A DNA stretch of 64,000 nt from Euprymna scolopes (Eukaryota). Position numbers and translations under genes: made by a program. Of the stretch, positions 27,783-47,165 are shown piece by piece; the stretch's first letter is position 1, and the number at the start of each line of letters is the position of its first letter. The notes below the pieces were generated by a model. The model was not told the origin of the DNA. It saw only the letters and a program-made list of their open reading frames with translations, and searched no databases. Location: the NCBI GenBank assembly GCA_053919585.1, contig CM132787.1, one strand, 5' to 3'.

Positions 27783-28998
27783 TGTCTCTCGACAAAGGCT
27801 TAATTTCTAGGGCAATTCTTCTCGACATATCAAAGACCTTCGACATTATTTGGCATAAAGGCCTACTACACAAGATTTCCAGCTACGGTATAACTGGAAA
27901 TGTTTTCTCGATCATTAAATCATTTCTCTCTGATAGCCTCATAAGAGTAGTGGTTGATGGGCAGAAATCAGAGACCCACAGTATTAATGCTGGAGTCCCT
28001 CAGGGGTCCATACTGGACACAGGTCTCTTCCTGAGCTACATCAATGATCTCCCAAAACACATACTAAAATCCTTCGTTGACATCAATGCTGATGACACGA
28101 CCATCTATGGCAACACATCACAGGCCGTAAATGATGATGTTCTCTCTGATTCTCTCTCCTCTGAACTTGAGCGCGTGGTACAGTGGGCAAAAAGGTGGCT
28201 GGTTACCTTTAATGCATCTAAGACCAAGCTCCTATCTCTACATCATAAACACTCTGATCCCCGTCTAGCATCAATTGAAATGGATGGCTCTCGTCTAGGG
28301 CAGGCTTCATGTTTTGATAAGCTTCTAGGTTTGATCTTTACTCCTGATCTTAAATGGAACACATACATCAAATCGGTGGCAAAGGTCGCTGGGAAAATGG
28401 TGGGATCCTTCTACCGCTCCAGAAGATAGCTCACTAATCATGCAATTCTCTATCTATATAAGACCCAAGTACGTCCAAAGATAGAGTATTGCTGCCACAT
28501 ATGGACAGGAGTTGATAAATAAGCCTATCCTGCCTTGACAGAGTACAAAATAGACTACATGGCTTAGTGGGGATACCCTTTTCTCTTCCCTGCAACCTCT
28601 TTCCCACAGAAGAGACGTAGTGAGTCTGTCTTTATTCTATCGTTATTTCCATCGATAGAGCTCGTCTGAGCTCCATTCTCTGGTCCCCCCTCGCCAATCT
28701 TTAAAAAAAAACACCCGACTAGCTGAAACCCCCATCAATAATTTTCCCCACTCCTTATCTGTGCCTAAATTAAAACGTAGATTCCACGAACAAAGCTACT
28801 TTCTTAGAACTGCACGCCTGTGGAACTCTGTGCCGCTTGCCTGTTTCTCTCCCGACTTCAACCTGGATGTCTTCAAGTCCAACACAAACAAATTCCTGAT
28901 GAACCGCCCCCCTAAGTAATGACACCTTATCAATTCTCCAATACTATTGCTACACTATCCCATCGAGTACTGTACACACGATAATCCTTACCCCCGAG
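27783..28998 (+). mobile_element. LINE copy E (RT 3' half)
   Basis: ORF 27782-28429: LDISKTFDIIWH, GVPQGSIL, NADD, WLVTFNASKTK. Truncated family tail at ~28982. Confidence 0.9.
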
Positions 28999-29941: not shown

Positions 29942-30836
29942 CTAGCATTTCAGCTCGGCGTTGCTCGGGTTGTTGGAGGTGTATGCTGACCAGAAAAAAA
30001 GAAGTTGTATTAGGAAGGCAGGCTCGAACCCGTACCATGATGGAGCGAAAAAAGGGGGGGAACGTGACATATTTGCTGTTACGATCACTTTCAAACGGGA
30101 AGAGACGGAGGTTTAAATTAACGCTAGCCAATCGAAAAGAGGTGATGACTTTCGACAATATCGGCGAAAAAAGAGACCTCACCCTGTAGAAAAGTGTCCC
30201 GTTGAAGGTGAAGAAATTGGTGTTTTTAGCCAGTTTTTGATATTTGTCGTCTTAAAGGTCAAGCTTGAAAACGGTACTGATTTTGTGAAAATCCGTCGCT
30301 ACTGTCGAAAGTTTTAGGCAGACATGCAAGCATACATACATGCATACATTTATATATTGGAAGCTCAAATTTTCGACCCAAACGGAGTAAACGTTTGCCT
30401 TATCTTTGAATACCCTTTATGTAAAACTTCAAATGTTTAGACCAGAAATTGTCTGAGTAATTTGGTAGAGAGTGCAGCGGTCAATATATATTTTTTTTAA
30501 TTCAACCCGTGTTCTGACGCCTGAATATTCATTGTTTTGGGCTCAAATCAAGTTATTAAGTTAGATCCATGTCCAAGGAACCTATATCTAAAATTATAAG
30601 TAATTAGACCCAAAATTGGCGGAGGTGTTTGAAAGAGTTCTCAAAGGCTAAATTGTTGAATTTGGACCCCTTAACAGCCAACTTTCTGGCAGAAAGATGT
30701 TCCCAAATCTCAGTACACTGTATATAAAATTTTGAGTCTGTAAACTGAAAATTGGCAGAGATATTGTGTAGGGCAATATACACAGACATACAGAGACACA
30801 GACATACATACACTTTCACTTTTTTAGATATATAGA
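29942..30836 (-). mobile_element. Non-autonomous Helitron, ~0.9 kb, apparently with both termini
   Basis: Minus strand A|TCTATATATC ... ACCCGAGCAACGCCGAG (hairpin) .. CTAG|T, inserted between A and T with no TSD. The body matches the 45663-47132 array. Confidence 0.75.
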
Positions 30837-31740: not shown

Positions 31741-31799
<59 letters not shown>

Positions 31800-34000: not shown

Positions 34001-34074
<74 letters not shown>

Positions 34075-34519
34075 GTGGATATGGATATATTTATGCGCAC
34101 GCATCTTAATTATGTTCACGAAAACTTTCAATAATTAATCACGATGTAATTATGTCTTACTTATCAACGTTTATAACGTGTTTTTTTTTCACGATATTAC
34201 TTACGGTGTTTTATATTTAAATATTTACTGCAATTTCAAGTACATAACATTTAATTAATTACAATTAAATAATGCCATTTTATTCTTTTATCATCTTCTT
34301 AGTGGTAAGTAATTACATTATTTTTCTTTTCCTCTTTCCATCATTTCTATGTATTTACGAGCGGTTAGTTGATATATGAGATTATTCACATAAATCTGGT
34401 CGTTCACTTTTTGCTTATAATATTTTACTCATTAATCTTATACGCATAGTCACCCTGTTTACAACTATATTTATTCTACTCTCCATATTTTAAATATGAA
34501 GACAATTTTATATACTTAT

Positions 34520-34902
34520 TGTAACGTGCATCCAGGAGATAAGCGCCCGCGTGTTTGCGTGTTGTGTGGGTACGTGGGAGAGACGGATGAGGGGAAAAAG
34601 ACTTACCTCGAGACCAGCTCAGCGTTACCGACCAAAAATAGAAAAGAGGGACCAAGATGGCGACCGTCGTCTTTTGTAAAGTATGATGTCTCTCAAAGTC
34701 ACACGAATTCTCGGAATATGCAAATTTAGCCGGCCTAGAACGACGATAAAAGCGGGTGAGGGGAAAGACGTGGGGAGGGACGATTGAGTTGGCTGGGGAA
34801 TCGTGTGGCTGTTGCTTCTTGTTCCGTGTTGAGGATATCTTACCGTGTTAAAGAGAGAGTCGGGCGCCATCTTTAATTTTTCCTTACATTTTTTTTCTTA
34901 CA
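34520..34902 (+). repeat. 5' LTR (383 bp)
   Basis: TGTAACG...CTTACA, a direct repeat of 38568-38949. Confidence 0.97.
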
Positions 34903-34914
34903 AGCTATTTCGGC
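34903..34914 (+). promoter_or_regulatory. Atypical primer-binding site complementary to nt 1-12 of tRNA-Phe(GAA)
   Basis: AGCTATTTCGGC lies immediately after the LTR-terminal CA. Its reverse complement GCCGAAATAGCT is the 5' end of metazoan tRNA-Phe as recalled from memory. There is no TGG adjacent to the LTR. Confidence 0.65.
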
Positions 34915-34932
34915 CATTTGGCCTCTGGGACT

Positions 34933-35679
34933 ATGACCGAGTCGAAATTTGACTTAAAGCTCATACCCGAGTTTGACGGGTCCACGTCCATAGTCGACTG
35001 GGTTGAAAGGGTCGAGCTGACGTGCGACCTTTGTGAGGTGAAAAGGGTACACACTGTAATTCCCCTGAGATTGGCTGGGGGTGCCTTGAGTGTATATCAG
35101 CAACTCAGTGCTGCCGAAAAGGGAGATGTCACCGCAATTAAAGCTGCGCTGTACAAGGCATTTGCCATGGATCCTTGTACGGCCTATGAAAAATTTGCTT
35201 CTCGAAAACTTCTATCGGAGGAAAGCGTGGACGTTTTCTTCGCTGAGTTAAAGAAACTCGCAGTTCTGTTCGGTGGAGGGGTGTCGGAGCGGACGCTCGC
35301 GTACGCGTTTGTGGCGGGCCTTCCCACTCGGGTTAAGCAGCTACTGAGAGCCTCAACCAGCGTTTCAACAACGACCATGGAACACTTGATGGAATGTGCT
35401 CGAGCCATCATCAAAGATGAGGAGGACCTGGGGGAACCAGTTGTGATGGCGACACAGACAGGCCAGATTGGCGCTCGGGAGGTTCTGAATCAGAACCCTG
35501 CAAGCAATGGGAAATGTTTTCGCTGCGGCCGACGCGGACATTTTGCAAGGAATTGCACCAACAGGGGGCGTGTGCGCTGTTTTAAGTGTGGCGGTTTGGG
35601 GCATCTAGCCCAAAACTGTGCGGGAAACGTATCAGGGGAGAGGACGTCAGCGCCGCCCTGCTCCCCGAGCAAAATTTGA
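34933..35679 (+). CDS. gag: Gag (248 aa from ATG 34933) with two CCHC zinc knuckles
   Basis: Open frame; IPEFDG..VDWVERVE capsid-like N-terminus; CFRCGRRGHFARNC and CFKCGGLGHLAQNC. Confidence 0.93.
   Translation: MTESKFDLKLIPEFDGSTSIVDWVERVELTCDLCEVKRVHTVIPLRLAGGALSVYQQLSAAEKGDVTAIKAALYKAFAMDPCTAYEKFASRKLLSEESVDVFFAELKKLAVLFGGGVSERTLAYAFVAGLPTRVKQLLRASTSVSTTTMEHLMECARAIIKDEEDLGEPVVMATQTGQIGAREVLNQNPASNGKCFRCGRRGHFARNCTNRGRVRCFKCGGLGHLAQNCAGNVSGERTSAPPCSPSKI
35622..35666 (+). promoter_or_regulatory. -1 programmed ribosomal frameshift signal
   Basis: Slippery heptamer G GGA AAC (35622-35628) is in the gag frame, followed by a 6-nt spacer and a GGGGAG..CTCCCC stem-loop. Pol is in the -1 frame. 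Confidence 0.85.
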
Positions 35680-38600
35680 ACAAGGCGCAACCAGTAATAA
35701 CCGTCTACGTAAACAGGATACCCTGCTCAGCACTTCTCGACTCAGGCTGTTCGCATACTATAGTGAGCACCAGGCTGTGTCCAAGTTGGACTAAGAGGAA
35801 GATCAAAGTCACCACGATAGGAGGCGAGACCCAGACATGCTGTGGAGCTGGAACTGTCAAGATCTACACGGACACCGGTGCAGCCACTAAGATCAATGTG
35901 CTCGTGACCCAAGGAAATCTCCTGGGGTTTGACCTGTTGCTCGGATACGATGCCATCAAGGCGCTGGGGGGAGTCGCAATTCATCGAGATGGAAAGGTGC
36001 GATTCTTAGAGGCCCCAGTGTGTGCAGCGCTCCATATCGATCGGCCGGATTTTACAGTGGACTACGACTCGCGCAAGAGGGCCTGGATTGCATCTTGGAA
36101 GTGGACCGAGGGAATGGCACCGACTAAACTCAAGAATGGGGTTGCAGAGTACCCTATACCCAGTGACGCCCGAGCAGAATACGAAAGGGAACTAAAGGCG
36201 TGGATCCAAGATGGCTGGTTAATCCCCTACCCTGAGGACAAGCTTGGGCCTCCGAAGGGTCTAATGCCCTTGATGGCAGTAGTCCAGCATAACAAGTCGA
36301 AAGTACGGCCCGTGCTGGACTATAGGGAGCTTAACAAGCATATTGAAGCCTACACTGCCGATGCTGACGTATGCGCCAGTAAGTTGAGGGAATGGCGTCA
36401 GAAAGGCACTAATGTCTCAATATTGGATTTACGAAAAGCCTATTTACAGGTGCGAGTTGATGAGACGTTGTGGCCGTTCCAGACAGTTTGGTTCCAGGGG
36501 CAGAGGTACTTCCTTACACGCCTTGGCTTCGGCCTAAATGTGGCACCACAGATCATGAAGACTATTGTCAACACAGTATTGTCCCAAGAAAAGCCCATGA
36601 GGGACTCAACTTCAGCTTACGTTGATGACGTATACGTCAATGAAGATGTACAGTCTGCGTCGTGTGTCAAAGAAAAGTTGGCTCAGTTTGGTCTGGAATG
36701 CAAGAATCCCGAACGTTTAAGGGAAGGAGCACGTGTATTGGGATTGGATGTTTATGAAGAGGATGGCACCCTACAATGGAGGCGTGCCAGTGAAATTCCA
36801 AGCATCCCCAACCTCGTTACAAGGCGGACCATTTTTTCTTGGTGTGGAAAACTTGTTGGTCACTTACCGGTCTGTGGCTGGCTCCGCGCAGCTGTTGGTG
36901 TGATTAAACGCAGAGCAAATTTAACAACCACGGGTTGGGATGACATATCCGATGATGTCCTACTAACTCTGATGATTAAAGAGACACTGGAGAGAGTGAA
37001 CAAGAAGGACCCTGCCTGTGGGCGGTGGTGTGTTAACGGAGACAACGTAGGTGTGTGGGTTGATGCCAGTTCTTTGGCGTTGGGAGTATCATTGGAGCAA
37101 GGAGGAAACGTGTTCAAGGATGCGTGTTGGCTGCGGCCCGTAACAGATTCTCAGCATATCAACCTGGCAGAGCTGGAAGCTGTTGTAAAGGGGGTAAATC
37201 TGGCCCTGCAGTGGCAGTCTAAGAAGTTGACCTTGTACACAGATTCTCTCTGTGTCTACCACTGGGTGTCTGACACACTTTCAGGACGGACACGAATCCG
37301 TACCAAGGCAGCAAGCGAAATGTTAATACGGAGAAGGCTAGACACGCTAAAAAACCTGGTATCTGAGTATGGGCTATCACTGAGCGTCACTCTGGTGCCA
37401 TCACATTGTAATCGTGCTGACCAACATACCCGTGTACCTCACAAATGGTATGAAGCCGCGAAGATGGGAATGGAGATTACTGCTCGATCTTGTGCAGTTT
37501 CAATCGACCCATGTCAAATACAAAAAATTCATGCACAGAGCGGACATCCGGGTATTAAGAGGGCCCTTTATTTTGTGAGGCGTGCATACCCAGCAGTGAC
37601 CAAGATGGATGTCAGACAGATCGTCAGAAATTGTGAGGCTTGCCAGTCTATTAGTCCTGCACCAGAGCGATGGCAGAAGGGTCGCTTGGAAGTTGAGAGT
37701 GTGTGGCAGCGGCTGGCCATGGATATTACACATTACAGTGGCAAGCCCTTTCTAACTCTCATTGATTGCGGGCCTACGAGATTTGCGGTGTGGCGGCAGA
37801 TGACCAGACAGGATTCAGCAAATGTTGTTCGCAACCTATCATCCATTTTTTTTGAGCGAGGTGCGCCGGAAGAGCTCCTGACTGACAATGATGCAGCGTT
37901 TTGTAGCCAGCAAGTCCGGCAGTTGTTAGATGAGTGGGGCGTCCGTCTATGGTTGCGATGTGCGCATGTGCCATCAGGAAATGGCATTGCTGAAAGAAGC
38001 CATCGCAGCATCAAGAGAATTGCTGCCAGGAAGCGATGTACTATTGCGGAAGCAACATATTGGTACAACATTACGCCATAGGACGGGACGTCCCCTTCAA
38101 CCGCACCTGCGAATGCTATTTACACGTACCGAGTCGGAGTGAAGGGAATCAACACTACGCAGCCAACCGACAAGGGAACATATAACAGATATGAAGTGGG
38201 AGATCCAGTGTGGGTGCGGCCTCCAGGAAATCGGTGCACCGACAAGTTTAAGCGAGGACACATATCTGGAGTGATTAGCCAGCAGTCTGTTTTGGTCGAT
38301 GGAACCCCACGACATGTGCGAGATCTTCGCCCAGCTACCGAGGTGCGTCATACAACTACAGAAGAAAGCAGTGAAGCGTCTAGCGATGAGCTGCCGATGC
38401 ACGGATTCAGTGAGCCCCTTCCAGAGACTGATAGCGATACTTCATCTGATGAGGCGGAACCAGATCCAGAGCCCGAATCTGAAACAGTGAATGTACCTCT
38501 TCGCAGAAGCACACGCACTAAAAGGCCACCCCCCAGTGCTCTCCGTGATCATCAGATCAGGGGGGAGTGTAACGTGCATCCAGGAGATAAGCGCCCGCGT

Positions 38601-38777
38601 GTTTGCGTGTTGTGTGGGTACGTGGGAGAGACGGATGAGGGGAAAAAGACTTACCTCGAGACCAGCTCAGCGTTACCGACCAAAAATAGAAAAGAGGGAC
38701 CAAGATGGCGACCGTCGTCTTTTGTAAAGTATGATGTCTCTCAAAGTCACACGAATTCTCGGAATATGCAAATTTAG
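35622..38777 (+). CDS. pol: Pol (protease, RT, RNase H, integrase) with one in-frame TAG at 38079-38081
   Basis: LLDSGCS (PR); LDLRKAYLQ/YVDD (RT); VDAS..AELEA..YTDS (RH); H..GH..CEAC and MDITH/TDND/AERS (IN). The same frame continues after the TAG (VGDPVWV, PLRRSTR) to 38777, inside the 3' LTR. Confidence 0.92.
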
Positions 38778-38949
38778 CCGGCCTAGAACGACGATAAAAG
38801 CGGGTGAGGGGAAAGACGTGGGGAGGGACGATTGAGTTGGCTGGGGAATCGTGTGGCTGTTGCTTCTTGTGCTGTGTTGAGGATATCTTACCGAGTGAAA
38901 GAGAGAGTCAGGCGCCATCTTTAATTTTTCCTTACATTTTTTTCTTACA
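38568..38949 (+). repeat. 3' LTR (382 bp)
   Basis: Follows the PPT. Differs from the 5' LTR by 5 substitutions and a 1-nt T-tract indel. Confidence 0.97.
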
Positions 38950-41713
38950 CTTATATTAAAAGTAAACATTTGGTTCACGAATTACACCAATATTCCACGT
39001 TGACTACTGCGCATGGATTGTATAATTGTCTGCAGATTACTCATTGTTATTGATAAATAATTCCACGAGTGAATGATTCAAAAATGATTACAACTATATA
39101 TTTTTATAAAACCGTTCTAATTGGCTATACAATTGTATCTTCATTTTATAACCCAAGTGTAGCTTGATCTACAATTGGTTTGGTAATACAAATTTAATTA
39201 GAACGGATTTTGTACATCGCTTGTGGAGTTTTTGCAAAGAGTTGCCGAAACATACGCAAAAATCATATTAAGCGTGCTTTTAATGTTTAGTTTAAGCATT
39301 AATTCGCATTCTCAGTTTATTCTTATTAGCCCTTGATATAGGGCATGTTTTCAGGTCAGTAAAATTCCTATTATAGCATTAGCACAGATAGGTAGCGTAT
39401 TGCGTGTTTCATAAGTTTTATGAAATAATATGTAATATATCATGAAAATACGTCGTGCTATCTTATTACTTGAATGAGATTAATACACTCTAATTATATA
39501 ACAGGGTTTTTTACTACTATTCTTGGTTAATTGGATGTATACGATATACATTACGCTTGAATAAGGCCTACAAAACATCTATTCACAATAAAGGTTACTA
39601 TGAATATATATTAAAAACACCAGAAAGTGCATTAACTTTTCAAGCATAATTAATCTTAATCAAATGTATGTTAACTTCATAGATCCATTCTATAATCTAT
39701 CATAGAAAAACATTTGAAATGTTCTTGGCCAAAGCAACTGTGTATTAGGGTAATGATCCTATACTACCGAAAATAAATTATAAACACTATTGAATTTAAA
39801 ATGTCTAAAAGTGTGTTAATATTTTCATCAAAAGCGTAGCTATTTAAATGTTAAATTACTCCACATAAATCTTATTATCGATCTTAATCACAGGATTCGG
39901 AAGTCAAATTATTTCAGGTGTGGAATTCGCATATTATGACGGTTAAAACGCAGTAAAAATCTAATCATGTGGTTACATATAAAACCTTAAATATCATACG
40001 TGTGCGTCAGTTTAAATGGTAAGATAAGCATAAGCTAAAAATAGCATGTAGTATCATATCAAATTTATCGTGAATAGATAACACATAGTTTGTAATATTT
40101 TTTTCAACATTTTAAACAGTATCCCAGAAATAAGTTTGGCAGAAAAATTAAAACTGTAAACTTTACATTTCTTATCTTCCATATTTATTAGTTAAACGTA
40201 AAAAATTTTACCTCTTTTACCCACATAAATTATTATTTCATGTGAAATGCAGTGAAAATGCAACATTCATCTTTGAAGTATCATTTCCATGCAGCAGTAA
40301 TAACTAACAACGTACATCTAGCGCAGCACGAATTTGTTGGAGAGATATAGAACATAGAGCCTACAATGACTGTTCACAGCTCGTGGTAAGGAAGCGAATC
40401 TGTATAAAAATACCGCTGATAGGGCATCATTTTAAATTACCCATATTACATATATTGTTGATATCACAGTAAACATGTAAAACATTTATACTTAACATTT
40501 AATAATTTCCGTTGTAATTACATAAGAAGTCATAGGTAAGCATATGTCAGAGTAAGTAACGATTAGAAATCAACTAATAAGTTGAAAAACAATTTTAATA
40601 AAAACATATTTTCGCGATTATACCGGAAGTGTACTTTTATCTTTGTGTTTATTTAATAAGAAGGTCCTATTCTTCTATCTTTATCCAATTTTTGACTTGG
40701 GCCTATACGAATTTCTGTGTTTTAGGAGACTTTCACAATTACATGTTTATTTGTAAATAAAAAAAAACCTTGAGGGATGAAGTGAAAATTTAGTTAATTT
40801 TGCTCCATTTGTGTTTAATGATGCTCGATCACATTCTGTGAAAATATGAAATATTCTAAATTTTAATAGATAAAAAGCATCCTTTTAGAAAAGACTTAAA
40901 TATACACGGAAAGTAAGGTGGTGAGTAGTTTACATTCGTGCATATTAACTATTGTAAACAATTTCAAAACATATGGATTTTCTTAATTACACCCTGAATT
41001 TGTTTATTCTTGCATTAAATTAAACAAACTTAATATATGTTACGTATGTTACAGACAGTTGTCTAGCAATAATGTATCTATATTTATGAAGAAGCGTCAC
41101 ATAGTTGATGAGCAAATACCATATATACGGCTATATAAAACATAAACATATATATATATATATATATTGTAAATAGGAGAGGAAAAAACAGTGAAACGGT
41201 AGCATTAAAGACAACATTTAATACAACGCATTAAGATGATTATATCCTATTGCAAAGTTTAAAATAACATTCAAATGAAAACTTCCTATTTTTAGAAGTT
41301 GTTTACATACATATTAGTAGCAAATCGCATAATCTAGCGTGGGGTTTCATCTGATAATACAACTCTGATATAAATTTATAAGATGGGTCGCTATATTTCC
41401 GACTAAGGTTATTTTTTGCGCTGGGTTGAAAAGTGTTGTCTATATGTTTGGAGGTCAATAAAGAATTCAGATTTGCTGAAGTGTTATTTTCTTTACATCT
41501 ATCTCATAGATATGTCATATTCCGACTAATAGAATGGGCATATACTTTTAAACTCTTTTGCTAAAATTATTACCATTGAAAAGATAAAGTTTAGATTATT
41601 AACAAGTAAAGAAGAATTCTCTACTGAGAATTTATTATTAAATAACTTCTGATTAATTTGAGGCGATATTTTGTAGCGATCTAGTGGTTATGTAACATAT
41701 GTATATGTATACA

Positions 41714-41764
<51 letters not shown>

Positions 41765-42036: not shown

Positions 42037-42074
<38 letters not shown>

Positions 42075-42450
42075 ATACATATATATACATGCATGTAACC
42101 ACATGCGTATCTATATGGACATATAGGATATGTTTCATTCTATGAATGTATACATTTTTAACTTAATTTAATAAGTGTGTGATGAAATGAAACGAATGTG
42201 ATTAGAGTCTTAAATAGGTTAGCCGATTGGCAATATATCCCATGATAATTCAAGGACAAAGCGGCGTATTATATTCTAAAGAATTTATCAATGTTGCCTT
42301 TATTCGAAGACATTTCTTTTCATTTTTATTATTAAATTGCATGTAGTAATTTGAAACGAATAATATTTAAATCGATTCTTAAAATGCATGCATATGTATC
42401 GCATTATGAGTATAAGAAATCATAGATAATAATTTAGTAAGAAACTTATG

Positions 42451-42498
<48 letters not shown>

Positions 42499-45662: not shown

Positions 45663-47165
45663 GTCCAGTTGAAGGTGAAGACATTAATTTTCTCAGCCAA
45701 TTGTTCGATATTTGTCGTCTGAAAGGTCGGACTTTTAAACGATACTGATCTTGGTAAAATCGGCCGCCTCTCTCAAAAGTTCAAGGCAGACATGCAAACA
45801 TACATACACACATTTACATATTGGTAACTAACAATTTTCGACACACACCGATTAAAAAGCTTGCCCTATCTCTGAAAACCATTTATGATAAATGTCAAAT
45901 GTTTACACCAGAAATTGTCTGCGTAGAGACAGAAGAGGTAATTTTTTTTTTTACTTTGACCCCTATTATGACCCCCTAAAGATTTATTGTTTAGGGTTCG
46001 AATCAAGTTATTACGTTAGATCCGTGTCCAGGAAACCTATATCTTGAATTTCAAGTATTTAGACCCCAAATTCTCGGAGGAGATTATTGGGGTTCTCAAA
46101 GGTCAAATCGTTGAACTTTGACTCCTTAACAGTAAAATTTCTGGCAGAAAACCGATCCAATAGATTTTCCCTAATCTCAGTACACCGTATATAAAATTTC
46201 GAGTCTCTAGACTCAAAATTGACGCAGTTATTGCGTAGGGAAATGTGCACGGACAAATACACAGACAGAAACACATGCACGTTCATTTTATAGATATTAT
46301 ACTAGCATGGGTGCCCGGCGTTGCCCGGGTGTGAGGTGTATGCTTAGCAAATAAAAAAAGGATGATTTTTTTTAAAATGTGACCCCTATTATGACCCCTT
46401 AACATTTATGGTTTAGGGCTCTATTCAAGTTATTAATTTAGATCCATGTCCACGACACCTATATCTAACCTTTCAAGTATTTAGACCCAAAATTGCCAAA
46501 GGAGTTCTCAATAGCCAAATCCTTGAACTTTTAAAGTCAATTTCTGACCGAAAGCCGACCCCATTGATTTTTTCCACATCTCAGTTCCTTGTATATCAAA
46601 TTTCGAGGATGTAGACTAAATAGTGGCATAGTTATTCCGTAGGGAAATGTCCACAGACAGACACACAGACAGAAACACAGACACGGCCACTTTTATAGAT
46701 ACTATACTAGTATGGGTACCCGGCGTTGCCCTGGTGTGAGGTGTATACCGAGCAAAAAAATGGTCAATTTTTTTTAAATTTGACCCTACTATGGCCCCTA
46801 AACATTTAATTTTAAGGGTTCTAATTAAGTGATAAAGTAAGATCCATGTCCAAGGAAACTATATCTAAAATTTCAAGTATTTAGACCCCAAATTCTCGGA
46901 GGGGTTTCGTGTAGTTCTTAAAGGTAAAATTGTTAAATTTTGACCCCTTAACAGCCAAATCCCTGGCTAAAAGCAGATCACAAAGTTTTTCTCAAATCTC
47001 AGTACCCTTTTTATCAAATTTCGAGTATGTAGACTTAAAATATACGGAGTGTTGCGTAGGGAAATATACACAGACAGACACACAGACAGACACACCGACA
47101 AATCCACAGACACGTTCACTTTTATAGATACACTAGCAGTTCCGCCCGGTTTTGCTAGGACCCTA
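45663..47165 (-). mobile_element. Head-to-tail array of non-autonomous Helitron units (45663-46301, 46302-46706, 46707-47132, plus a further 3' end at 47133)
   Basis: Repeated body (TGACCCCTATTATGACCCC, GATCCATGTCCA, CAGA repeats). Each junction shows CTAG plus the CCCGGCGTTGCCC hairpin (degenerate at 47133) abutting the neighbouring unit's TC start. Confidence 0.8.

What the first reader, a model, noticed from the sequence alone, without database searches (positions are those of the whole stretch)
34895..34935. Gypsy PBS complementary to the extreme 5' end (nt 1-12) of tRNA-Phe: possible priming by a tiny 5' tRNA fragment
Seen: the 5' LTR end is fixed at 34902 by the 3' LTR and the TSD. It is followed directly by AGCTATTTCGGC rather than the TGG expected for pairing with a tRNA CCA end. 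Established (recalled): metazoan tRNA-Phe(GAA) begins GCCGAAAUAGCUCAG, so the 12-mer pairs 12/12 with tRNA nt 1-12. The match ends exactly at the tRNA 5' terminus on one side and at the LTR boundary on the other. Seven nt could also be read as acceptor-stem self-complementarity, but AGCTA matches only U8-U12. Known non-canonical primers include tRNA halves cut in the anticodon arm (copia, Ty5) and Tf1 self-priming, where RNase H cuts after an 11-nt duplex. Inference: this lineage may anneal the 5' arm of tRNA-Phe and cleave it after U12 (a trans version of the Tf1 mechanism), or use a pre-made ~12-nt 5' tRF. I found no matching self-priming sequence in the LTR. I cannot confirm whether this has already been described.
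Basis: partly seen in the sequence, partly recalled or inferred. Interest (0 to 1): 0.9.

Follow-up and report, generated by a model that had tools for sequence, protein, structure and literature searches.

The report
LTR retroelement primed by tRNA-Phe 5' end
A young, very abundant retrovirus-like mobile element in a mollusc genome, and its relatives in barnacles, decapods and whipworms, carry a primer site that pairs with the first 12 bases of tRNA-Phe instead of a tRNA 3' end, which points to a way of starting reverse transcription that I could not find described.

Summary
The element is at window 34520-38949. It has 383/382-nt TG..CA LTRs, a CTTAT target duplication, a polypurine tract, gag, a -1 frameshift site and pol.

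AGCTATTTCGGC follows the 5' LTR directly. It pairs 12/12 with nt 1-12 of the host's own tRNA-Phe(GAA), whose genes I found and verified with ARAGORN.

- **Not a damaged copy:** hundreds of 98-100% identical copies carry the same site. None has a TGG-type site.
- **Conserved in relatives:** twelve lineages have the 12-mer flush against the LTR end. They come from this genome, three unnamed assemblies, a barnacle, two decapods and Trichuris (pol 44-64% identical). Both flanks are unrelated between lineages.
- **Variation looks host-linked:** only the three bases facing tRNA nt 4-6 vary. Unrelated families in one host share the variant. Animal-type tRNA-Phe genes starting GCCTAGA and GCCTCGA exist in metagenomes.
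- **Self-priming excluded:** no LTR pairs with its own site better than shuffled sequence.
- **Literature:** ten full-text searches found no description of such a site.

Most likely a 12-nt 5' piece of tRNA-Phe primes minus-strand synthesis. How it is cut after U12 is untested. The "Gypsy" label is doubtful, because pol looks more retrovirus-like.

The parts
34515..34519 (+). 5' target-site duplication CTTAT
   Evidence: The same 5 bases follow the 3' LTR at 38950-38954.
34520..34902 (+). 5' LTR, 383 nt, TGTAAC...CTTACA
   Evidence: Direct repeat with 38568-38949. The two differ by 5 substitutions and 1 indel.
34903..34914 (+). Primer binding site AGCTATTTCGGC, the reverse complement of nt 1-12 of host tRNA-Phe(GAA)
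   Evidence: Sequence. Host tRNA. Conserved flush to the LTR in 12 lineages.
34933..35679 (+). gag, 248 aa, with two CCHC zinc knuckles
   Evidence: Translation. Pfam zf-CCHC at E 2.8e-11.
35622..35628 (+). Candidate -1 ribosomal frameshift site G GGA AAC in the gag/pol overlap
   Evidence: The heptamer sits in X XXY YYZ register of the gag frame, and pol is in the -1 frame. Function is inferred.
35586..38777 (+). pol frame: protease, RT, DUF7047, RNase H, integrase. This copy has one in-frame stop at 38079-38081, and the frame ends inside the 3' LTR.
   Evidence: Pfam RVP, RVT_1, DUF7047, RNase_H, Integrase_H2C2 and rve. The single stop is at residue 832. ORF list.
38559..38567 (+). Polypurine tract AGGGGGGAG, abutting the 3' LTR
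   Evidence: Six of the eight relatives with a mapped 3' LTR have GGGGGGAG in the same place; L171 reads GGGGGAG and L046 GGGAGGAG.
38568..38949 (+). 3' LTR, 382 nt
38950..38954 (+). 3' target-site duplication CTTAT

Best explanation
This is a recently active LTR retroelement. Its minus-strand primer is the extreme 5' end of cytoplasmic tRNA-Phe(GAA), not a tRNA 3' CCA end.

**Shown here**
- The 12 bases that directly follow U5 pair perfectly with tRNA-Phe nt 1-12, that is the 5' acceptor strand plus U8 to U12.
- The pairing ends at the mature tRNA 5' terminus on one side and at the LTR edge on the other.
- The arrangement is conserved across a large clade of elements in molluscs, crustaceans and nematodes.
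- The three bases facing tRNA nt 4-6 differ between hosts, but unrelated families in the same host share them.

**Inferred**
- Gag's zinc-knuckle chaperone opens the acceptor and D stems, and the genomic RNA anneals to the tRNA 5' arm.
- The tRNA is cut after U12, leaving a 3'-OH. The most likely agent is the element's own RNase H, whose D-E-D-D and His motifs can be read in the translation. This would be a trans version of the cut that Tf1 reverse transcriptase makes after its 11-bp self-primer duplex.
- The 12-nt RNA is extended through U5-R.
- Plus-strand strong-stop synthesis can copy the primer only as far as the tRNA's natural 5' end. That would explain why the site is exactly 12 nt long.
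For: - **Anatomy and the 12/12 match:**
- **Not a mutated copy:** the 40 copies that were scored are 98-100% identical over LTR end, site and gag start, out of 1455 candidates. 378 places have the same flanks around a 12-mer of this type. RNA-run contigs cover the element, and many copies keep pol frames of about 1000 aa or more.
- **Conservation:** 12 lineages with pol 44-64% identical have the 12-mer flush to the LTR's terminal (C/T)A. The share of the commonest base is 0.90 in the site, against 0.58 upstream and 0.43 downstream.
- **Host-linked variation:** both Trichuris suis families read ...ATCGAGGC, both decapods ...ATCTAGGC, and both families of ENA sample ERZ25084518 ...ATTCCGGC. The barnacle and the mollusc read ...ATTTCGGC.
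- **Matching tRNA genes exist:** animal-type tRNA-Phe(GAA) genes beginning GCCTAGATAGCT and GCCTCGATAGCT were found in metagenomes. A published Drosophila tRNA-Phe 5' probe contains AGCTATTTCGGC (PMC7038984).
- **No room for another site:** the leader is only 3-20 nt beyond the 12-mer.
- **No self-primer:**
- **Mismatch pattern is typical of tRNA-primed sites:** perfect and one-mismatch versions occur on several backgrounds, as reported for mouse ETn, MusD and IAP (PMC7472051).
Against: - There is no biochemical evidence. No primer-cDNA junction and no 12-nt RNA was observed.
- About 60% of the family's copies carry one C-A mismatch to the host tRNA, T to C opposite A5 or A6. The genome has no tRNA gene with G5 and only one with G6.
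- The tRNA-Phe sequences of the decapods, Trichuris, the barnacle and the unnamed ENA hosts were not read from those genomes. The two variant tRNA genes come from metagenome contigs of unknown organisms.
- If integrase trims one or two bases beyond CA, the primer could end at C11 or G10 rather than U12.
- A 12-nt primer is short. Tf1's 11 nt, recalled from the literature, is the only precedent.
Confidence: 0.7

Rival explanations
1. The primer is still tRNA-Phe nt 1-12, but it is a ready-made host 5' fragment that is packaged, not a piece cut out by the element's RNase H after annealing.
For: The complementarity and conservation fit this equally well. 5' tRNA fragments cut in the D loop are a known class, which is established knowledge.
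Against: Known 5' fragments are 14 nt or longer, and their unpaired 3' bases (C13, A14) could not prime. Many tRNA-cutting nucleases leave a cyclic phosphate rather than the 3'-OH a primer needs, whereas RNase H leaves a 3'-OH. No small-RNA data could be examined here.
Confidence: 0.18
2. The 12-mer binds the tRNA-Phe 5' arm for another purpose, such as packaging, translation control or dimerisation, and minus-strand synthesis starts by some other primer.
For: Only pairing potential is shown, not priming.
Against: The LTR edge marks where minus-strand DNA starts. It coincides to the base with the end of the pairing in all 12 lineages. The 3-20 nt leader leaves no space for another site, and no TGG-type site flush with the LTR is seen in any lineage.
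Confidence: 0.06
3. The primer is the 3' end of some other small RNA, or a transcript of a tRNA-Phe-derived repeat, that happens to contain GCCGAAAUAGCU.
For: The genome holds tRNA-Phe-like pseudo-copies that start with the same 15-mer (L002 and L003).
Against: Complementarity stops exactly at tRNA nt 1, and nothing beyond it is conserved. The host-linked variants match real tRNA-Phe acceptor stems. An RNA merely ending in this sequence would have to co-vary in the same way in three phyla.
Confidence: 0.04
4. Tf1-type self-priming: the start of the element's own transcript folds back on the site.
For: The duplex length of 12 bp is close to Tf1's 11 bp (recalled).
Against: In five elements, no 12-mer of the LTR pairs with the site better than in shuffled LTRs. 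The best scores were 8-10 pairs including G-U, against a shuffled mean of 9.1-9.8.
Confidence: 0.01
5. Chance match, or a damaged copy of an element that normally has a TGG site.
For: None found.
Against: Hundreds of copies and 12 lineages share the arrangement. The chance estimate is about 6e-6 even for a single case.
Confidence: 0.01

Closest known systems
Tf1/Tf2 self-primed LTR retrotransposons of fission yeast (Levin 1995, cited in PMC7472051; details recalled)
   Same: A very short duplex (11 bp there, 12 bp here) forms between the site next to U5 and the extreme 5' end of an RNA. The primer has to be released by a cut at the end of that duplex, which in Tf1 is made by the RT's RNase H.
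   Different: In Tf1 the RNA is the element's own transcript, acting in cis. Here no LTR holds the complement, and the partner is a host tRNA acting in trans. The pol of this clade is also not Tf1-like.
tRNA-fragment priming in copia, 1731 and Ty5 (initiator tRNA-Met cut in the anticodon arm; recalled)
   Same: A piece of a tRNA is used rather than its CCA end, so a cut inside the tRNA is required.
   Different: Those sites pair with an internal stretch that ends in the anticodon stem-loop of tRNA-iMet, and the primer is about 39 nt long. Here the pairing is nt 1-12 of tRNA-Phe and the primer would be 12 nt.
Canonical tRNA 3'-end priming of retroviruses, Ty1 and Ty3
   Same: The site lies next to U5, the primer is a host tRNA, and the site shows host-linked variation. 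Perfect and mismatched versions co-exist, as in mouse ETn, MusD and IAP (PMC7472051).
   Different: There is no TGG, and pairing is with the opposite end of the tRNA. The 12 nt length is set by the tRNA's 5' terminus rather than by a modified base that stops plus-strand copying.
Odin retrotransposons and retroviruses (PMC9040795)
   Same: They have gag-pol without env, an extra domain between RT and a cellular-type RNase H, and RT and integrase closest to retroviral ones.
   Different: Odin was reported only from sea anemones, at 1-6 copies per genome. This clade occurs in protostomes with thousands of copies. Kinship was not tested by phylogeny here, and no primer site is discussed in that paper.

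Membership tests
LTR retroelement | Two LTRs with TG..CA ends, a short target duplication, a polypurine tract before the 3' LTR, and gag and pol between them | tested here: met
   LTRs of 383/382 nt, TSD CTTAT, PPT AGGGGGGAG, gag with CCHC knuckles, pol with PR-RT-RH-IN.
Canonical tRNA 3'-end primed element | The site next to U5 begins TGG and is complementary to the 3' CCA end of a tRNA | tested here: not met
   The LTR is followed by AGCTAT... in all 12 lineages, and the leader is too short for a second site.
tRNA-half priming (copia/Ty5 type) | The site is complementary to an internal stretch of initiator tRNA-Met ending in the anticodon arm | tested here: not met
   Pairing is with nt 1-12 of tRNA-Phe(GAA).
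Tf1-type self-priming | The site is complementary to the first ~11 nt of the element's own transcript (within the LTR) | tested here: not met
   No LTR segment pairs better than in shuffled LTRs, in five elements.
Tf1-type self-priming | The primer is released by an RNase H cut at the end of an RNA-RNA duplex | not testable with these tools
   This needs an enzyme assay. The translation shows the D, E, D, D and His motifs of RNase H.
Ty3/Gypsy (Metaviridae) | pol order PR-RT-RH-IN | tested here: met
   Order of Pfam domains.
Ty3/Gypsy (Metaviridae) | Gypsy-type RT and RNase H (Pfam RT_RNaseH / RT_RNaseH_2), and RT grouping with Metaviridae | tested here: inconclusive
   There is no RT_RNaseH hit. 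Instead Pfam finds DUF7047 plus RNase_H PF00075. The nearest solved proteins are MMTV integrase and HIV-1 and foamy-virus RT. The nearest named Atlas cluster outside its own is retroviral Pol. No phylogeny was made.
BEL/Pao (Belpaoviridae) | Pao-type peptidase A17 and DUF1758/DUF1759 domains | tested here: not met
   None of these families was hit.

The most novel reading that the evidence does not exclude
An old, protostome-wide clade of retrovirus-like LTR elements starts reverse transcription with a 12-nt primer. Its own RNase H cuts this primer out of the 5' end of an annealed host tRNA-Phe. This would be a fourth class of primer for LTR retroelements, beside the tRNA 3' end, the tRNA half and the self-primer, and a trans counterpart of the Tf1 mechanism. 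The recurrent T-to-C changes opposite A5 and A6 would then reflect either a priming-versus-silencing trade-off with 5' tRNA-Phe fragments or copying of the primer.
Probability: 0.45. Interest if true: 0.9.

Novelty: new variant of a known kind. Interest (0 to 1): 0.8.

Why it matters
**Mechanism.** All textbook schemes for LTR retroelements and retroviruses prime from a tRNA 3' end. The known exceptions are tRNA-iMet halves and Tf1 self-priming. A clade that uses the first 12 bases of tRNA-Phe would add a new solution. It would show that cutting a primer out of an RNA duplex is not a fission-yeast oddity.

**Annotation.** Tools that look only for tRNA 3'-end complements will miss or misjudge these elements. 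That matters because the clade is very large, with 13,338 candidate DUF7047 places in this 5.9-Gb genome alone.

**Host defence.** The finding gives 5' tRNA-Phe fragments a possible role, as primer or as a guide for silencing, that can be tested directly.

**Testability.** The family is young and present in RNA libraries, so the primer-cDNA junction should be recoverable from tissue.

Tried and rejected
- **Self-priming:** the best LTR-to-site pairing was no better than in shuffled LTRs in five elements, so this was rejected.
- **tRNA gene variants as the source of the within-family variants:** GCCGAGATAGCTCAG occurs once, GCCGAAATGGCTCAG twice and GCCGGAATAGCTCAG not at all in the genome. This does not explain the roughly 58% of copies with T to C.
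- **Simple subfamily inheritance of those variants:** they track markers in 30 copies. But the same toggling occurs on at least 4 LTR-end haplotypes and in a second family. It is therefore recurrent or spread by recombination, and remains unexplained.
- **Viral contig collection searched with pol:** no relative found.
- **Trichinella locus L048:** no LTR pair and no motif, probably a truncated copy.
- **L178+L208 and L193+L223:** truncated or rearranged, so not informative.
- **Transcript start from RNA runs:** only assembled contigs were served. They show presence but give no ends.
- **Naming the organisms that hold the GCCTAGA tRNA-Phe:** organism names were coded and only 4 words were sampled.
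- **Protein searches of the own genome with distant pol queries:** these failed for technical reasons.
- **Literature:** ten full-text searches found no description of a primer site complementary to a tRNA 5' end. The 12-mer itself appears only inside northern probes for tRNA-Phe. Subscription journals and Repbase or Dfam notes were not searchable, so prior description cannot be excluded.
- **Earlier notes of this scan:** nothing near this place.

Full report
**What is at the coordinates.**
- A direct repeat of about 383 nt lies at 34520-34902 and 38568-38949. Both copies start TGTAAC and end CTTACA.
- The same five bases, CTTAT, flank the pair at 34515-34519 and 38950-38954.
- AGGGGGGAG sits directly before the 3' copy.
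- Between the repeats are a gag frame with two CCHC knuckles (34933-35679) and a pol frame in -1 (35586 onward). Pol carries Pfam RVP, RVT_1, DUF7047, RNase_H, Integrase_H2C2 and rve.
- This copy has one in-frame stop at 38079. The two LTRs differ by five substitutions and one indel.
- The heptamer G GGA AAC at 35622-35628 lies in the right register of the gag frame for a -1 frameshift.

This is a complete, young LTR retroelement of 4430 bp.

**The 12-mer and the host tRNA.**
- AGCTATTTCGGC follows the LTR's CA directly. Its reverse complement is GCCGAAATAGCT.
- The window itself holds no tRNA gene.
- The whole genome is 5.9 Gb. Runs labelled mollusc metagenome hold the element.
- The genome has 695 exact copies of GCCGAAATAGCTCAG, many in tandem arrays.
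- ARAGORN calls normal tRNA-Phe(GAA) genes starting with those bases, for example L001:1443-1515:-.
- The pairing is therefore 12/12 with nt 1-12 of the host's own tRNA-Phe. It cannot extend further. On one side the tRNA ends. On the other, C13 would face the A of the LTR's CA.

**Not a damaged copy.**
- The LTR-end, site and gag-start segment finds 1455 candidates in the genome. The 40 that were scored are 98-100% identical.
- A pattern that fixes only the flanks finds 378 places. Every one of the 100 listed places holds a 12-mer of this type, and none holds a TGG site.
- Contigs from poly-A and oligo-dT RNA libraries cover the element.
- Many copies keep pol frames of about 1000 aa or more.

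**Relatives.** Pol finds 679 proteins at E below 1e-10. All listed hits carry DUF7047. The named sources are Trichuris, Trichinella, Petrolisthes, Macrobrachium and Amphibalanus. I fetched the DNA around nine of them, mapped their LTRs, and added two further families from the window's own genome. tabulates the 12 lineages.

| Host or sample | 12-mer |
|---|---|
| Window family; second family in this genome; ERZ21867824; ERZ25068762; Amphibalanus | AGCTATTTCGGC |
| Third family in this genome | AGCTATTTCAGC |
| ERZ25084518, two families (57% and 49% pol identity to the window) | AGCTATTCCGGC |
| Petrolisthes and Macrobrachium | AGCTATCTAGGC |
| Trichuris suis, family a | AGCTATCGAGGC |
| Trichuris suis, family b (an older copy) | ATCTATCGAGGC |

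In every lineage the 12-mer is flush with the LTR's terminal (C/T)A. The 14 bases on either side are unrelated between lineages. The share of the commonest base is 0.90 in the site, 0.58 upstream and 0.43 downstream. The leader between the site and the gag ATG is only 3-20 nt.

**Variation follows the host.**
- Only site positions 7-9 differ between hosts. These face tRNA nt 4-6, the middle of the acceptor stem, which is where tRNA genes co-vary between taxa.
- Unrelated families in one host share the variant.
- One metagenome scan for GCCT[A/C]GATAGCTCAG... mostly returned bacterial tRNAs. It also returned two animal-type tRNA-Phe(GAA) genes with the D arm and anticodon arm of metazoan tRNA-Phe. 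One begins GCCTAGATAGCT and the other GCCTCGATAGCT. These are the exact complements of the decapod and Trichuris sites.
- A published Drosophila northern probe for the tRNA-Phe 5' part contains AGCTATTTCGGC (PMC7038984).
- The link between each variant and each host's own tRNA remains an inference. Those genomes could not be searched.

**Rivals.**
- *Tf1-type self-priming* needs the complement of the site at the transcript start. In five elements the best pairing of any LTR 12-mer with the site, counting G-U, is 8-10 of 12. That is no better than in shuffled LTRs.
- *Another RNA's 3' end* would have to co-vary like tRNA-Phe in three phyla and stop at tRNA nt 1.
- *A non-priming role* is hard to square with the site ending exactly where minus-strand DNA must begin.

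**Mechanism.** The pairing is shown. The rest is inference from established retroelement biology. A primer needs a paired 3'-OH, so the tRNA must be cut after U12.
- *Agent of the cut.* RNase H leaves a 3'-OH, while many tRNA-cutting nucleases leave a cyclic phosphate. Tf1's RT/RNase H is known to cut an RNA-RNA duplex after 11 bp. The element's RNase H domain shows the D, E, D, D and His motifs in the translation. I therefore favour a cut in trans by the element's own enzyme over a ready-made host fragment.
- *Why 12 nt.* Because the primer's 5' end is the tRNA's natural 5' end, plus-strand strong-stop synthesis would run off after 12 nt. This would explain the length of the site.
- *Exact 3' end.* If integrase trims bases beyond CA, the primer's 3' end could be C11 or G10. 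The invariant A at site position 1, and the G at position 2 kept in 11 of the 12 lineages, pair with U12 and C11 and so favour U12.

**An unexplained detail.**
- Of the first 100 places, about 39 have the perfect site. About 37 have T to C opposite A5, about 21 have T to C opposite A6, one has it opposite A9, and two are singletons.
- The genome has no tRNA gene with G5 and one with G6.
- The variants track markers in 30 copies. Yet they recur on at least four LTR-end haplotypes and in a second family.
- A review of mouse ETn, MusD and IAP reports the same behaviour for true tRNA-primed sites. There the commonest sites are mismatched, and perfect and mismatched versions are scattered over the tree. 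[quoted passage not shown]
- Here the mismatches fall at nt 5-6 of the tRNA. That is far from the primer's 3' end and inside the seed of a would-be 5' fragment guide. I did not test this.

**Classification.**
Pfam finds no Gypsy-type RT_RNaseH domain and no Pao peptidase.
- The nearest solved proteins are MMTV integrase and HIV-1 and foamy-virus RT.
- The nearest named cluster outside its own is retroviral Pol.
- The layout RT, extra domain, cellular-type RNase H, no env recalls the Odin elements of sea anemones (PMC9040795). I made no tree and claim no kinship.

**Novelty.** Ten full-text searches found no description of a primer site complementary to a tRNA 5' end. Subscription literature and Repbase notes were out of reach. 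I rate this a new variant of a known kind, tRNA-fragment priming with a Tf1-like cut. Confidence is about 0.7 that tRNA-Phe nt 1-12 is the primer, and about 0.45 that the element's own RNase H makes the cut.

Noticed in passing
window 34909-34910 (site positions 7 and 8); G000 places; L172-L177; L210-L227: Within the family, about 39% of copies have the perfect site, about 37% have T to C opposite tRNA A5 and about 21% have T to C opposite A6. The G/C positions and the six bases nearest the LTR hardly vary. The same toggling occurs on several LTR haplotypes and in a second family. Matching tRNA genes are absent or single.
   Followed up: partly
window 35622-35628: The heptamer G GGA AAC in the gag/pol overlap is in X XXY YYZ register of the gag frame, with pol in -1. 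It is a likely ribosomal frameshift site.
   Followed up: partly
window 36822-37007 (pol residues 412-473) and the RNase H after it: The Pfam domain DUF7047 sits between RT and a cellular-type RNase H (PF00075 / RVT_3). It may be a degenerate 'tether' RNase H as in retroviruses and Odin elements. There are 13,338 candidate DUF7047 places in this genome. No structure was predicted.
   Followed up: no
G000:C28:101706348-101720813 and G000:C18:100.09-105.52 Mb: There are very large tandem arrays of tRNA-Phe(GAA) genes, with a period of about 219 bp on C28. The genome holds 695 exact 15-mer matches, including degenerate copies and tRNA-Phe-like pseudo-copies (L002, L003).
   Followed up: partly
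window 38568-38777: The pol frame runs about 210 nt into the 3' LTR, and the polypurine tract lies inside the pol frame. The same is seen in L044, so the layout is very compact.
   Followed up: partly
window 30236-30822 versus 45704-47050, and 28028-28327 versus 47571-47870: Diverged direct repeats (64-80% identity) about 15.4-19.5 kb apart bracket the element, and the downstream set is itself repeated with a 400-820 bp period. They could be another, older repeat or a satellite in which the element sits.
   Followed up: no
window 31750-31790, 34010-34070, 41720-41750, 42040-42080, 42460-42490: Several long (AT)n microsatellites.
   Followed up: no
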